Source: Hyaloraphidium curvatum SAG 235-1 (lineage: Eukaryota > Fungi > Monoblepharomycota). From it: a stretch of 64,000 bases of DNA. Every line of letters begins with the position of its first letter. Positions within the stretch are counted from its first letter, which is position 1. Shown in pieces: positions 38,995 through 43,752 of this stretch. The DNA is taken from contig JAIVFI010000012.1 of NCBI GenBank assembly GCA_025558095.1, forward strand, positions 310,001 to 374,000, read 5' to 3'. A program made the translations under genes and the position numbers. The notes under the pieces were generated by a model, which saw only the letters and a program-made list of their open reading frames with translations, was not told the DNA's origin and did no database searches.

Positions 38995-39798
38995 CTACCC
39001 GACCGTGACGCCTGCCGTGCGAAACGAGAGGCCAAAGACGGTGATCAAGAGGGCGCCGAGGACAAAGGTGAAGACCAGGTCGATGTATCCCGAGTCGAGC
39101 CCCAACTTCGTCAAGCTCCAAAGGGCCCACACGGCGAAGGCTGGCGAAAAGGTCGTGTGAGCGGGCAAGGCACAAAAGAGAGAATGATAGAACTCTTTAC
39201 CGGTCCAAAGAACGCCGATGACGGCCTGTGATGGCGGGATTAGATTATCGGCGACCAATGGACTTAGCAGGCCCACCGAATCCGCGCCGAAGCCCGTCTG
39301 CGTGATCATTACGGCCGCCAAGAAGAGGATGAAGCCGTCCCTGATCGCACGTGTGGCTGCCGCGAAGTAATCGCCCTAGCGTTTGACGAAGCTCAGTGCC
39401 CTTCACCGGACGCCTTCCAGGTGCGCTTTACAGACCCAGGTCGGCTCCTCGAGCCACTCCGCTCCCTTCTCCTCTCCAGGCACCGGCAGCTGCTCCTTTG
39501 TGACGGCGAAAATCTTGTAGAAGCTCTCGGCGAGGTAGCTGAACCACCAGAGGATCAGCTGTATGTACAAGATGACGTAGGCCGCTGGGAACGACCCCGA
39601 TACGTCAGACAGATGCTGCACTGCAATGCGAATCGCTGCAACGATGCTGCTTACATCGCAGAGTTCCGTACTGGGGGAGCGGGTAGAATGAGCGAACGTG
39701 CACCGTGCCGACGGGCTCTCACGCACAGGGAAGCCTATAACCCCGTCGATTGTCGGAGACTGTCCCGTAATAGGGTCGCCACGCTCGAACAGGGCCAT
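38995..39798 (-). CDS. Uncharacterised 4-TM protein, paralog A; 5 introns
   Basis: Spliced: MALFERG...FPYGTLRSAYVILYIQLILWWFSYLAESFYKIF...PTWGDYFAAATRAIRDGFILFLAAVMITQTGFG...LWTAFAVWALWSLTKL...IDLVFTFVLGALLITVFGLSF. Confidence 0.8.
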
Positions 39799-39943
39799 TT
39801 TGGAGGGAAGCTTGGACGGTGGACTGTCGGGGTGAAAGGTTGTCGGGCGCCCAGTCAGCGGTCGGAAGCGCCCCGCAGGCTTTCCACCAACACAACAACC
39901 AACCGCTCGTCCCTGGCGCCTAGGAGCGCCGATAGACAACGCC

Positions 39944-40806
39944 ATGGAGACTGCTGGAGAGCACCGTCTTCTCGCTCGGCAGCTGGGCGTCAACGTGACA
40001 GCCTTCGCTAGTGGGCTGCGTTCCGAGACCGTCTCACGGTCGACATCTGACCACGCCTCCCTGCTCCCTTTCTGGCTCGTATTCCACCCTCCTGCTCTTC
40101 TTTCCGATTCTTCGTTCGTTGGGAAGATGGAGGAATGTACTCCATCTGGATCATAGTCTAGTGAGGCTCCGTTGAACGATTTCCTCGACAGCGCCCCCGC
40201 TGAACGATGCGCTCCATCGCTGTGAACCTCGCTGAACGCGGCTCGGTCGTCCAAGCATCCTTCTCATCATGTGGATGGTCTCTTGGTTCTGCGAGTTTGT
40301 CTACGGCTTGCTCGCCGCGGGGAGGAAGGCTGCGGAGGGGGGCCAGAAACCGGGCGAGCGCAGGTCGGACTGGGGAGAGCGCTTTGCCAACTCGGTGCGC
40401 CTGCTGCGCGACGGACTGTTCCTCCTACTCGGGAGGTGCGACGAGCTTGCGTTGCGCATCTCGTCCCCTGACTGTCTGAATCCTTGCCCTTTGCAGCATC
40501 ATGATCAACCAGAGCTCTTTCGGGATCACGCGATCGGTAAGCGCAGTACCTGGAGTCAGCATTCGATGCTGCTGATCTGCAATCTGTTCAGGTGCTCGCG
40601 CTGACGTGGACGATATTTGCCCTCTTCATTGTCTGGTCTTTTGCCAAGCTCTTTACAACTTCAAAGTACGTGAATGCGAGCAACGCAGTCGAATTCGTCT
40701 TGCTGAGCCAGTTCGATGCGGCAGAATCGTCGACTTCGTCTTCTGGTGGCCTGTCGCAGGTCTTCTGATCGCAGTGTTCGCTCTTGCGTGGAATGCTTCG
40801 TCTTGA
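39944..40806 (+). CDS. Uncharacterised 4-TM protein, paralog B; 5 introns
   Basis: Spliced: METAGEHRLLARQ...FANGGMYSIWIIVYILLIMWMVSWFCEFVY...DWGERFANSVRLLRDGLFLLLGSIMINQSSFG...TWTIFALFIVWSFAKL...IVDFVFWWPVAGLLIAVFALAW. Confidence 0.8.
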
Positions 40807-40981
40807 GAGAGGAGGTGCCACTCTCTTTTAGCATTCTGAGTTGTACATCAACTGGAGAGAATGACAATGAGCCGTCGTCCTCGTTCGTTGCGTCGTTGCT
40901 TTTGGTGGCTTCCCTGACCGATGACGAAGCGGCAACTGTCAACAACTCCACTCCGAGCACACGCTCCCGCGCCGGTCCACG

Positions 40982-41668
40982 ATGAGCGCAGCTGCCTTTG
41001 ACGAAGCTACGCACTTCTCAAGCTTGCTACCGCGGCAGCCGGGCACCGGCGTTACCAACTATCTCCGCTTCCCCTGTAAGGACGCCCCCTCAACGACTCG
41101 ACGAGTCGGCCCGGAGCGCACTCACCGGGCCTTCCAGACAACAACCTCAGGTCCGTATGGGTGGCCGTCTTCGTCCTTGTGCTCATTTGGCACGTGGCTT
41201 GGCTCATCGAGATCTTTTGGGTCCGTGACATCGCGTTGCTGCCGCTGCCCTGGTTCACCGTCTTCCCGCCGAGCAGAAACTCTTTGTCCGCCGCCTTGAA
41301 GCCCCTCCGCCTCCGCGAGCTGGGCAGCTCCAGCCGCCTGAGCCTTACAAGCCGACCTGGGGCGAGAAGCTGGCCAACGCCTCGCGGATCATTCGAGACA
41401 GCTTCGCCCTGCTCTTTGCGGCCATTGTCATCAGCCAAGTCTCCATCGGCGTTCCCGGATACACCCTCGGGCTCCTTTGGGCAGTGTGGGCGGTGCTCGT
41501 CTTCTGGACGCTGGTGAAGCTGGTCACCGACAATGCGTAAGCTGATCCACCGGTCTGCTCACGGTCCCAGCTTATCCGGCCACGCGCAGATGGGTCGACC
41601 TCGTGCTCTGGCTTCCCGTTTCGGTCTTTCTCATTGCAATCTTCTCCTTGGCTTTCGGACGTGGCTGA
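40982..41668 (+). CDS. Uncharacterised 4-TM protein, paralog C; 3 introns
   Basis: Spliced: MSAAAF...LLPRQ...FPYNNLRSVWVAVFVLVLIWHVAWLIEIFWKLF...PTWGEKLANASRIIRDSFALLFAAIVISQVSIG...LWAVWAVLVFWTLVKL...WVDLVLWLPVSVFLIAIFSLAF. Confidence 0.82.
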
Positions 41669-41723: not shown

Positions 41724-43670
41724 TCAGGTTGATGCAGTTGACGTTCGATACATGCGCCAGAAGATCCAGACTACCAGCGCCGATGTCACGAGACTGATGA
41801 CGGTTCCGCGCACGAGAAGGTACGCAACGGCAACGAGGAACACAAGCCCACCGTACACGAACTTTGCATGCTCGCGCGGCGGCCCTGTCGTCCCGGAACC
41901 CCGCCGGTTCTTCCGCACCACAACCTTGGCGCTCGAGCGTTTGAGGCTTCGCGCTTTGATGTTCGCAGCGTTGAGTGCGGGCAGGGATGGCTCCGGCACT
42001 CCTTCGGTGAAGCCCAGGAGGCGTCCTTCGACACTCCAGCGACCTGCTCCGACAATCTCGACGTCGACCATGCGCCCGAGCACCTCGTCATCCCGACCCT
42101 CGGCATCTACAAGGATTTGAGTGTAGCTCTTGTCATGTCCGATAAGCTTAACCCCGTCGTGCGCGCGATCCGTCACCAAGACGGCTCTGATCGTGTGGCC
42201 GACCAGGGCCTCGTACGGCCGGAACGCTTCAAAAACCTGGGTAATTTCCCGCGTCCGGTCCTTCTTCACGCTTTGCGGCACGACGGGCACCATGCGCGCG
42301 GCAGGAGTCCCGGGCCGGGGATAGAATTGCGAGATGTGGAGAATGGGGAAGGAGTAGCGCCGCACGAGCTCCACAGTCTCGCGGTGGTCCTCCTCCGTTT
42401 CGCCCGGGAATCCGCAAATCACGTCCGTGGCGATGGTTATGCCGGGCACGGAGCCGAGGAGGCTGTCACAGACGCGACAAAACTCGGCGGCGGAATAAAG
42501 GCGCTTCATTCGCTCCAGGATGCTGTCCGACCCCGACTGGACAGGGATATGCAGGAAGGCAAAGACGCCTGGATGATTCAAGACGGCCGATATCCTTTCC
42601 AAGTGGTCCACAATGTAAGGCGGGTTCGTCATGCCGACCCGAAGCCTGACATGCGGGTGGTGGTCCAGGATCCCCGTGATGCTCTCCAGAAGCTCGGCGA
42701 TGTTGGTCCCAATGTCGAGCCCATAGGCGCCCGTGTCCTCGGAAGTCAACCAGATCTCCACCACTCCCTCGCCAATGACCTGCTCGATCCGGTCCAGAAT
42801 TGCCCGCGGTTCGTAAGATCCCAGATTGCCGCGGGCAAACTTGGTTTTGCAGTAGGTGCAGGAGTTGAGGCATCCCGTGTTGATGGGCACGACCTCGATC
42901 AGCGGATTCCGGCGAATCTTCGGCAGGTCCAACGGGGCGCCGCCCGCTTTGCGCTTTCCGCTCTTTGACGTAGCCTCGATTTGTCCGTGGTCCGCGAGCT
43001 CCGCATCTGACGGCTGCGACTCCACAACATCTTCCGTCCGCTCCCGCACGAGCTGAACGGAACCCCCCTTCAGAGTTTCCTCGACAACCTCGACCACACG
43101 ATCGATCTGCTGAACTCCGACCACGCTCAGTCCATTCCAGCGTGGATCCCGCGGCGAATGTTGGGAAACGCAGCCAGCAAGAACGACCCTCTTCCCACTC
43201 TCCTTCGCCCGCTCAATCTCCTTGACAAAGGCGAGCTCCGAAGGATTCTTGACAGAGCACGAGTTGATCAGCCACAGATCGGAATCCTCCCTCCCTTCGT
43301 CGTCGTCCAGCACCACATCGTATCCCTCGCGCGAAAGTAGACCGGCCATGACCTCGGAATCGGAACGATTGTGGCTACAACCGTAGGTCTTGACGTAGAT
43401 CGTAGCTCGCCCGGGAAGGAAGTACGTTCCGCTGCCGATTTCCTTCCCGGGAGCCTCAGACCCGGCGTCCATCGATGGAACATGCCGCCTCTGTTTCGCC
43501 CCCGGCGGCTTGACGGCCCTCGTCGTCCGTGGCCGGGCAGACGAATGGACGAGAACTTCGGCGGCCTCCCCGCTTCCACTCCACAAATCCACCTTTCTTC
43601 CGCCACTCCGACCCCGTGCAACGTCTTCCACGGACAGTTCCTCGATGTCCTCTATGGCTTCCCCGTCCAT
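41724..43670 (-). CDS. CDKAL1: Threonylcarbamoyladenosine tRNA methylthiotransferase (radical SAM, C-terminal TM anchor); intronless
   Basis: KTYGCSHNRSDSE, LWLINSCSVKNP, AGCV, GCLNSCTYCKTKFARG (CxxxCxxC), EIWLTSEDTGAYG, RVGMTNPPYI, TRAM-like region, hydrophobic tail. Confidence 0.96.
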   Translation of the reverse strand: MDGEAIEDIEELSVEDVARGRSGGRKVDLWSGSGEAAEVLVHSSARPRTTRAVKPPGAKQRRHVPSMDAGSEAPGKEIGSGTYFLPGRATIYVKTYGCSHNRSDSEVMAGLLSREGYDVVLDDDEGREDSDLWLINSCSVKNPSELAFVKEIERAKESGKRVVLAGCVSQHSPRDPRWNGLSVVGVQQIDRVVEVVEETLKGGSVQLVRERTEDVVESQPSDAELADHGQIEATSKSGKRKAGGAPLDLPKIRRNPLIEVVPINTGCLNSCTYCKTKFARGNLGSYEPRAILDRIEQVIGEGVVEIWLTSEDTGAYGLDIGTNIAELLESITGILDHHPHVRLRVGMTNPPYIVDHLERISAVLNHPGVFAFLHIPVQSGSDSILERMKRLYSAAEFCRVCDSLLGSVPGITIATDVICGFPGETEEDHRETVELVRRYSFPILHISQFYPRPGTPAARMVPVVPQSVKKDRTREITQVFEAFRPYEALVGHTIRAVLVTDRAHDGVKLIGHDKSYTQILVDAEGRDDEVLGRMVDVEIVGAGRWSVEGRLLGFTEGVPEPSLPALNAANIKARSLKRSSAKVVVRKNRRGSGTTGPPREHAKFVYGGLVFLVAVAYLLVRGTVISLVTSALVVWIFWRMYRTSTAST

Positions 43671-43752
43671 CGCGGGCGCCAAGAGCAATGAACACGATGC
43701 CGTTTACCTCGCGTCTCAGAAAACAAGAAACAACCCGCGACCCGCACAGGGC

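What the first reader, a model, noticed from the sequence alone, without database searches (positions are those of the whole stretch)
38995..41668. Cryptic cluster of three divergent paralogs of an unknown small 4-TM family
Seen: three ~160-170-aa genes, fragmented or absent in the ORF track, arranged A(-) / 145 bp / B(+) / 175 bp / C(+). All share: (F)..S..., W..(S/A)(W/Y)..E, a variable loop, WG..(F/L)A...R.(I/L)RD...L, I.Q...G, W......W...KL, D.V.......LI..F.L.(F/W). B and C share the first and last intron positions, whereas A differs, so the duplications are old yet the genes stay tightly linked. I recognise no known domain. Inference: subunits of a co-expressed hetero-oligomeric channel, membrane scaffold or receptor. 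This is the best candidate here for an undescribed system.
Basis: partly seen in the sequence, partly recalled or inferred. Interest (0 to 1): 0.8.

Follow-up and report, generated by a model that had tools for sequence, protein, structure and literature searches.

The report
Paired four-helix membrane genes of chytrids
The three hidden genes are real, transcribed and conserved, and they belong to an unnamed family of small four-helix membrane proteins found only in chytrid fungi, nearly always encoded as a back-to-back pair, probably a distant relative of the MAPEG membrane enzymes that has lost their glutathione-binding motif.

Summary
Observation confirmed. Window 38995-41668 of Hyaloraphidium curvatum holds three multi-exon genes: A(-) 168 aa, B(+) 158 aa and C(+) 171 aa. 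All 13 introns are GT-AG. The proteins are 35-37% identical to each other (Smith-Waterman z 33-44).

RNA contigs show 9 of the 13 introns spliced. An uncovered gap of about 80 bp separates the A and B transcripts, which points to a shared bidirectional promoter. B introns 1-3 and C's last intron rest on cross-species conservation only.

A relative (contig L007) keeps the same A/B/C cluster, with non-synonymous change about 0.2 per site against synonymous 0.64-0.78.

A search of 1.8 billion proteins found about 15 relatives, all from chytrid or monoblepharid fungi or from metagenomes, and none is characterised. Ten of 12 loci examined carry a head-to-head pair of family members. In Chytridiomycetes each pair has one alpha-clade and one beta-clade member. 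Gene A is orthologous to the Gonapodya minus-strand partner.

No Pfam family passes its threshold. There is a remote MAPEG link. Four members score 15-21 bits against a cut-off of 23.4. One AlphaFold2 (AF2) model hits mPGES-1, MGST2, MGST1 and FLAP first. Against it, the RX3NX2E/D motif is absent in 27 of 27 rows, profile-profile tests are blank, and the second model gives only generic bundles.

A hetero-oligomer is plausible but unproven.

The parts
38995..39798 (-). Gene A, 168 aa. CDS exons 39798-39727, 39670-39655 (16-nt microexon), 39584-39436, 39375-39277, 39225-39201, 39140-38995 (stop 38997-38995).
   Evidence: All five introns are spliced in an RNA contig. ORF check. Exons match the family HMM. 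Ortholog in L007 with pN 0.18 against pS 0.64.
39824..39903 (.). Uncovered gap between the ends of the A and B transcript contigs: the presumed shared bidirectional promoter core.
   Evidence: The A contig ends at 39823, the B contig starts at 39904, and there is no RNA depth between them. Strand and exact transcription starts cannot be read from contigs.
39944..40806 (+). Gene B, 158 aa. CDS exons 39944-40010, 40127-40160, 40256-40435, 40497-40536, 40592-40665, 40725-40806.
   Evidence: Introns 4 and 5 are spliced in RNA. Introns 1-3 are retained in the contig 39904-40441. They are inferred from frame, GT-AG ends and conservation of the exon 1 and 2 peptides and splice sites in L007. Exons match the family HMM.
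40982..41668 (+). Gene C, 171 aa. CDS exons 40982-41075, 41138-41220, 41277-41536, 41590-41668. The public model KAI9024692.1 (P0001, 146 aa) stops inside the donor of the last intron and lacks TM4.
   Evidence: Introns 1 and 2 are spliced in RNA. The last exon is inferred: 75% identical in L007 with pN 0.18 against pS 0.75, present in P0006 of a third organism, matches HMM positions 143-166, and the equivalent intron in B is RNA-verified.

Best explanation
A, B and C are three functional paralogues of a small, unnamed family restricted to chytrid-grade fungi. Each protein has four membrane helices. The order is a short N-terminal tail, TM1, a 25-60-residue Pro- and charge-rich loop, an amphipathic lead-in ending in a near-invariant Arg-Asp at the start of TM2, a tight Gly turn, TM3 with two invariant Trp, and TM4, which usually opens with Asp.

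Shown here: the genes are transcribed and spliced, are under purifying selection, and have stayed physically linked. The basic unit across chytrids is a divergently transcribed pair of family members. The Hyaloraphidium lineage carries a third copy in tandem.

Inferred (about 0.4): the partners are made together from a shared promoter and assemble into one hetero-oligomer in an endomembrane.

Inferred (about 0.55-0.6): the fold derives from, or at least resembles, the MAPEG four-helix protomer. MAPEG proteins work as trimers with ligand sites at subunit interfaces, so the assembly may be a mixed trimer.

The MAPEG glutathione motif is absent. The proteins are therefore more likely to bind or present a lipophilic ligand, or to act as a scaffold as FLAP does, than to be glutathione transferases.
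For: Gene models and expression. Paralogy. Purifying selection on all three genes against the L007 orthologues: dN/dS about 0.12-0.15, or dS saturated. Same trio and same order next to the same kelch gene in L007.

Family range: the exhaustive search gave 20 hits at E<=1e-3. About 15 are true relatives, and those named are from Gonapodya, Entophlyctis, Spizellomyces, Nowakowskiella, Blyttiomyces, Cladochytrium, Rhizophlyctis and Quaeritorhiza.

Head-to-head pairs: 10 of 12 loci. In the tree every chytridiomycete pair is one alpha plus one beta member (UFboot 97 and 92), and Hyaloraphidium A groups with the Gonapodya minus-strand partner (91).

MAPEG leads: Pfam PF01124 matches full length in four members at E 4e-4 to 0.02. 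Protein-language-model neighbours are MAPEG clusters at 0.75-0.77. UniRef names SPPG_06520 'MAPEG family protein'. The P0012 model (pLDDT 87) has MAPEG chains in its first 30 listed Foldseek rows, 29 of them at prob 0.96-1.00. In a Foldseek-independent scan of 48,161 chains its best hits are mPGES-1 at Z 12.4, MGST2 at 10.8, MGST1 at 9.4 and FLAP at 9.4.

General MAPEG facts come from PMC13605077: four helices, both termini on the same side, homotrimer, active site at the subunit interface.
Against: No direct evidence of any protein-protein contact. Pfam scores stay below the gathering cut-off, and only one subgroup (gamma) scores at all. No exon of A, B or C hits any Pfam family.

Profile-profile comparison with four of this genome's own MAPEG genes gives nothing. 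The family HMM scores about 0-5 bits on seven of them. Profile searches of PDB sequences give no MAPEG hit.

The model of the closest full-length relative of C (P0003, pLDDT 77) matches only generic four-helix bundles by geometry, and MAPEG only weakly in Foldseek (E 0.3). RX3NX2E/D is absent in 27 of 27 family rows.

The gamma subgroup is unpaired, so pairing is not obligatory for the family. The tree cannot say whether the monoblepharid and chytridiomycete pairs descend from one duplication. B's first three introns appear retained in the only RNA assembly available.
Confidence: 0.5

Rival explanations
1. The paralogues act separately. Each forms its own homo-oligomer with a different ligand, compartment or condition. 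The head-to-head arrangement persists only because an inverted tandem duplication left two genes dependent on one short bidirectional promoter that is hard to split.
For: Known MAPEG proteins are described as homotrimers (PMC13605077). The gamma-type members of Spizellomyces and of a Rhizophlyctis assembly stand alone. A, B and C are equidistant at about 36% identity, as expected after free divergence. The RNA contigs give B's 3' part a lower depth and show B's 5' introns retained, which hints at separate regulation, though contig depth is a poor measure.
Against: The pair is retained in 10 of 12 loci from lineages that are very old, with both members under constraint and one member of each clade per pair. 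Both partners share lineage-specific TM1 features, Glu in monoblepharids and Pro in chytridiomycetes. That fits co-evolution or gene conversion between partners.
Confidence: 0.3
2. The family is unrelated to MAPEG. It is a lineage-specific four-helix membrane bundle of independent origin, acting for example as a scaffold, a small-solute channel or an assembly factor. The MAPEG signals reflect only shared length, topology and hydrophobic periodicity.
For: All sequence-based MAPEG signals are sub-threshold or absent. The defining motif is missing. The P0003 model resembles generic bundles. The Atlas structure searches give no MAPEG cluster.
Against: Four different kinds of method point to the same family and no other. 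These are the Pfam HMM (4 members, full-length collinear), language-model features for two queries, Foldseek for two models, and a Foldseek-independent geometric scan in which 4 of the top 6 of 48,161 chains are MAPEG.
Confidence: 0.35
3. The genes are mis-modelled or decaying: chance ORF fragments or pseudogenes.
For: B introns 1-3 are retained in the RNA contig and C's last exon is missing from both the public model and the RNA contigs.
Against: The three models are complete ORFs with canonical introns. Nine introns are verified by RNA. All exons are conserved with pN far below pS. Homologues exist in at least 10 other genomes.
Confidence: 0.02

Closest known systems
MAPEG superfamily (Pfam PF01124: MGST1/2/3, LTC4 synthase, FLAP, mPGES-1)
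   Same: Size of about 150-190 aa. Four membrane helices with both termini on the same side. A long loop between TM1 and TM2. Conserved charged residues where TM2 begins. The predicted fold of one family member is closest to mPGES-1, MGST2, MGST1 and FLAP. Pfam matches are sub-threshold but full length.
   Different: Scores are below the Pfam cut-off. The TM2 motif RX3NX2E/D is absent in all 27 rows, and a near-invariant Arg-Asp appears to stand near that place (the non-significant local alignment puts the Asp on the MAPEG Glu). No conserved Arg or Tyr is seen in TM3 or TM4. The genes come as head-to-head paralogue pairs, whereas MAPEG enzymes are described as homotrimers (PMC13605077). The family is restricted to chytrid-grade fungi.
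The canonical MAPEG genes of the same genome (7-8 loci on other contigs, for example the MGST3-like gene at L008)
   Same: Same organism, similar length and topology.
   Different: They pass the Pfam cut-off (28-74 bits), and six of the seven read out show an N-x2-E-x2-P core (seen). They are unlinked to the cluster. They give no score with the family HMM or hhalign.
FLAP (5-lipoxygenase-activating protein), the non-enzymatic MAPEG member
   Same: A possible functional analogy: a MAPEG-fold protein that is listed among the six eukaryotic members without glutathione transferase activity of its own (PMC13605077; its ligand-binding role is from my own knowledge).
   Different: No specific sequence similarity. 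FLAP ranks below the LTC4S and mPGES-1 chains in the Foldseek list and below mPGES-1 and MGST2 in the geometric scan. This is an analogy only.

Membership tests
MAPEG (PF01124) | Score at or above the Pfam gathering cut-off (23.4 bits) | tested here: not met
   Exons of A, B and C give no hit at E<=10. Of 15 homologues only 4 score, at 15.2-20.9 bits. The six-frame scan of the genome with PF01124 finds 7-8 other loci but not this cluster.
MAPEG (PF01124) | Motif RX3NX2E/D in TM2 (PMC13605077) | tested here: not met
   Regex over 27 family rows, including A, B and C, gives 0 matches. The strict motif is present in 2 of 7 own-genome MAPEGs.
MAPEG (PF01124) | Four transmembrane helices, N- and C-termini on the same side | tested here: met
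   AF2 models show four long helices. Hydropathy scans of the sandbox models recover TM1, TM3 and TM4 in B and all four in C, but only the C-terminal segments in A. An even helix count puts both termini on the same side. Which side faces the cytosol was not computed.
MAPEG (PF01124) | Fold superposes on solved MAPEG protomers better than on other folds | tested here: inconclusive
   P0012 model: mPGES-1 Z 12.4 (rmsd 3.2, 126 aligned), MGST2 10.8, MGST1 9.4 and FLAP 9.4 among the top 6 of 48,161 chains, and Foldseek prob up to 1.00 but E about 0.1. P0003 model: only generic bundles by geometry.
MAPEG (PF01124) | Homotrimer with a glutathione site at the subunit interface, and GSH-dependent activity | not testable with these tools
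   No multimer prediction or assay is available here.
Chytrid paired four-helix family (unnamed, defined here) | Collinear match of the whole protein to the family profile, with the W (TM1), R-D (TM2 start), G (turn) and W...W (TM3) invariants | tested here: met
   Summed exon scores against an HMM built without the window's protein are about 89 bits (A), 67 (B) and 118 (C). The invariants are listed and are present in all three genes.
Chytrid paired four-helix family (unnamed, defined here) | Head-to-head partner of the same family within about 1 kb | tested here: met
   A and B are divergent with 145 bp between their ATGs. The same arrangement is seen in L007, L016, L018-L024.
   None of these families appears in the Pfam scans at E<=10 or in the listed rows of any structure search.

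The most novel reading that the evidence does not exclude
The family is the first MAPEG-type membrane protein that works as an obligate mixed oligomer. In most chytrids two different subunits would be made from one bidirectional promoter. In the Hyaloraphidium lineage three different subunits (A, B, C) would build an asymmetric trimer. Its interface pockets would use an Arg-Asp pair instead of the glutathione motif and would bind a still unknown ligand specific to zoosporic fungi.
Probability: 0.2. Interest if true: 0.75.

Novelty: new variant of a known kind. Interest (0 to 1): 0.55.

Why it matters
Every member of this family is filed as 'hypothetical protein'. No paper in the library mentions the locus tags. 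No Pfam family covers it. Even so, the gene pair has kept its back-to-back arrangement in every monoblepharid and chytridiomycete pair locus examined, which is unusually stable micro-synteny for fungi and argues for a function that needs both partners. If the MAPEG link is real, it would extend a medically important fold of homotrimeric glutathione and eicosanoid enzymes to a motif-less and possibly heteromeric form. It would also give a clean natural system for asking how symmetric membrane trimers become asymmetric. On the practical side, this report corrects one public gene model (C lacks its fourth helix), supplies models for A and B, and flags unannotated partners in several chytrid genomes.

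Tried and rejected
- Pfam on nine exon translations gave nothing.
- Word-index searches with exon references found only the public model of C and one ortholog of B. With the family alignment they found only four known members.
- The own-genome six-frame search found no further copies.
- Profile searches of PDB sequences returned only noise.
- hhalign against four own-genome MAPEGs was blank. The family HMM against seven of them was also blank.
- The Atlas structure searches gave unrelated bacterial bundles.
- The idea that A-type and partner-type form two clades across all chytrids was tested by tree and is not resolved. The alpha/beta split is clear only inside Chytridiomycetes.
- C is not a gamma-type member despite weak grouping in the tree (support 38/66). 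It keeps the monoblepharid TM1 Glu and the TM4 Asp.
They were assembled only inside the sandbox, from window coordinates, for the ORF check, pairwise comparison, hydropathy and tree rows.

Full report
**What is there.** The window is contig 12 (310001-374000) of Hyaloraphidium curvatum. Reading the three frames and laying the only public RNA assembly (run X1) gives three complete genes.
- Gene A is on the minus strand and encodes 168 aa in six exons, one of them a 16-nt microexon at 39655-39670.
- Gene B is on the plus strand and encodes 158 aa in six exons.
- Gene C is on the plus strand and encodes 171 aa in four exons.
- All 13 introns are GT-AG, 51-116 nt long, and the joined frames are open to a stop codon.

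**RNA support.** The X1 contigs are 100% identical to the window and skip introns with canonical ends, so they derive from RNA.
- All five A introns, B introns 4 and 5, and C introns 1 and 2 are spliced.
- The A contig ends at 39823 and the B contig begins at 39904, with no depth between them. This suggests two divergent transcription starts about 80 bp apart.
- First weak point: the contig covering 39904-40441 is colinear with the genome, so B introns 1-3 are retained in it.
- Second weak point: at the 3' end of C the contig carries a minus-strand intron (41511-41562) instead of C's own last intron (41537-41589). This is probably because the 3' UTR of the convergent CDKAL1-like gene overlaps C.
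- For these four introns the evidence is comparative. In the relative L007 the B exon 1 and 2 peptides, both donor sites and the acceptor are conserved, and the frames agree. A 61-nt intron is needed in Hyaloraphidium to keep the conserved downstream frame.
- C's last exon is 75% identical in L007, with pN 0.18 against pS 0.75. It is also present in a third organism (P0006).
- The public model of C (146 aa) ends in the donor of that intron and so lacks the fourth helix.

**More than chance.**
- A, B and C are 35-37% identical over about 150 residues. Their Smith-Waterman scores lie 33-44 standard deviations above shuffles.
- Against a family HMM built without the window's own protein, their exons match collinear profile segments at 19-72 bits each.
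- A six-frame search of the whole genome finds only these three copies.
- Against the L007 orthologues all three are under purifying selection: pN 0.18-0.21, pS 0.64-0.78, dN/dS about 0.12-0.15 where dS is not saturated.

**Relatives.**
- Pfam finds nothing in the exons.
- The exhaustive search of 1.84 billion representatives with the public C model gave 20 hits at E<=1e-3. About 15 of them are true small membrane proteins of 108-214 aa.
- Where named, they come from Gonapodya (two species), Entophlyctis, Spizellomyces, Nowakowskiella, Blyttiomyces, Cladochytrium, Rhizophlyctis and Quaeritorhiza. The rest come from metagenomes or unnamed assemblies.
- All are labelled hypothetical, except one UniRef entry named 'MAPEG family protein'.
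- No paper in the library cites the locus tags.
- The language-model atlas also points to an unnamed Mucoromycota cluster at 0.85-0.88. I could not retrieve it, so the family's outer limit is open.

**Conserved pairing.** I fetched the genomic context of 11 relatives and scanned all six frames with the family HMM.
- L007, a relative with 54% G+C against 65% here, has the same kelch gene followed by A(-), B(+), C(+).
- Both Gonapodya species, Cladochytrium, Nowakowskiella, Entophlyctis, Rhizophlyctis, Blyttiomyces and a metagenome contig each carry exactly one head-to-head pair. In several of them the partner is unannotated or split in the public annotation.
- Only the two gamma-type loci (Spizellomyces, and a Rhizophlyctis-labelled assembly) are single.
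- A CDKAL1-like radical-SAM gene also neighbours the pair in Gonapodya sp. and in the metagenome contig, as it does here.
- In a maximum-likelihood tree of 27 rows, each chytridiomycete pair contributes one member to clade alpha (UFboot 97) and one to clade beta (92). Hyaloraphidium A and its L007 ortholog group with the Gonapodya minus-strand partner (91). The gamma group sits on a long branch.
- The positions of B and C, and the question whether the monoblepharid and chytridiomycete pairs stem from one duplication, are not resolved.
- Both partners share lineage-specific TM1 residues, Glu in monoblepharids and Pro in chytridiomycetes. This fits co-evolution, gene conversion or independent duplication alike.

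**What the protein looks like.**
- AF2 models of two members show four long helices. Hydropathy scans recover most of the corresponding segments in B and C but only the C-terminal ones in A.
- The loop between helices 1 and 2 is variable and rich in Pro and charged residues.
- Near-invariant positions are a Trp in TM1, Arg-Asp at the start of TM2, a Gly in the TM2-TM3 turn, and two Trp in TM3. TM4 usually opens with Asp.
- From my reading of the aligned sequences, most basic residues lie in loop 1 and at the TM2 start. This is a qualitative impression, not a computed count. It would place loop 1 in the cytosol and both termini outside.

**Relation to MAPEG: evidence for.**
- Pfam PF01124 aligns full length (profile positions 3-128 of 129) to all four gamma members, at 15-21 bits against a cut-off of 23.4.
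- MAPEG clusters are the only named language-model neighbours for two different queries.
- Foldseek ranks MAPEG chains first for both models. E is 0.3 for P0003. For P0012 MAPEG chains fill the first 30 listed rows, 29 of them at prob 0.96-1.00, with TM-scores of 0.50-0.61.
- A geometric scan that does not use Foldseek puts mPGES-1 (Z 12.4), MGST2 (10.8), MGST1 (9.4) and FLAP (9.4) among the top six of 48,161 chains for the P0012 model.

**Relation to MAPEG: evidence against.**
- Nothing reaches a curated threshold.
- Profile-profile comparison with four of this genome's canonical MAPEG genes, and HMM scoring against seven of them, give nothing. PDB profile searches are also blank.
- The lower-confidence P0003 model resembles only generic bundles by geometry.
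- The motif RX3NX2E/D, which the literature describes as conserved in TM2 (PMC13605077), is absent in all 27 rows.
- My estimate is about 0.55-0.6 that the family is a very diverged MAPEG-fold lineage. It should not be filed as a MAPEG member.

**Mechanism.**
- Shown: three expressed, constrained and linked paralogues, and an old, widely conserved divergent pair.
- Inferred: co-regulation from the shared promoter and assembly into a mixed oligomer.
- If the fold is MAPEG-like, the natural model is a trimer with ligand sites between subunits. That would be two kinds of subunit in most chytrids and three in Hyaloraphidium.
- Without the glutathione motif, a ligand-binding or scaffolding role like that of FLAP is more likely than transferase activity.
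- The main rival is separate homo-oligomers held together only by promoter sharing.

**Limits.**
- One RNA assembly only, kept as contigs, so strand, transcript ends and minor isoforms are unknown.
- No multimer prediction was available.
- Fungal genomes other than the window's own could be reached only through exact-protein look-ups.
- Joined spliced models were not sent to any search or fold tool. Database searches used exon references or public protein ids.

Noticed in passing
window 41511-41562 (minus strand): The RNA contig shows a canonical minus-strand intron (GTGAGC...CAG) that cuts through gene C's exon 3 and intron 3. The same contig runs on into the convergent CDKAL1-like gene (stop at 41724). 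The two convergent genes therefore appear to overlap at their 3' ends, with a spliced 3' UTR antisense to C.
   Followed up: partly
window 39904-40441: The RNA contig at depth about 89 retains B introns 1-3 and ends in Illumina adapter sequence at 40441. The downstream part of B has depth about 10 with introns 4 and 5 spliced. This could be regulated intron retention or an assembly artefact.
   Followed up: partly
window 40982-41668: The public protein model of gene C (KAI9024692.1, 146 aa) stops at a TAA inside the GTAAGC donor of the last intron and so lacks the fourth membrane helix.
   Followed up: yes
window 40943: The contig carrying gene C has 98 further letters at its 5' side that do not lie on the 2.85-kb stretch laid. 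They could be an upstream exon far away or a chimeric join.
   Followed up: no
G000 contigs C21, C23, C4 (two), C41, C45, C2, C26 (loci L008-L015): The genome holds seven canonical MAPEG loci above the Pfam cut-off and one just below, including an MGST3-like gene. None is linked to the cluster.
   Followed up: partly
L007:3838-3948: In the relative, the equivalents of B exons 4 and 5 are contiguous. The intron at 40537-40591 of the window is therefore absent there, through either gain or loss.
   Followed up: no
L018:6907-7765; L020:7070-7585; L021:4447-5207: The partner genes of the pair are split into two models (Cladochytrium) or not annotated at all (Gonapodya sp. JEL0774, Entophlyctis) in the public annotations.
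   Followed up: partly
L024:4986-5114: Blyttiomyces helicus has a third, partial match to the family HMM (positions 116-156, E 3e-5) about 2.5 kb downstream of its pair. It may be a further copy or a fragment.
   Followed up: no
L020:3843-6808; L023:879-2942; window 41724-43688: A CDKAL1-like radical-SAM gene neighbours the family pair in Gonapodya sp., in a metagenome contig and in this window. This is conserved micro-synteny beyond the pair itself.
   Followed up: partly
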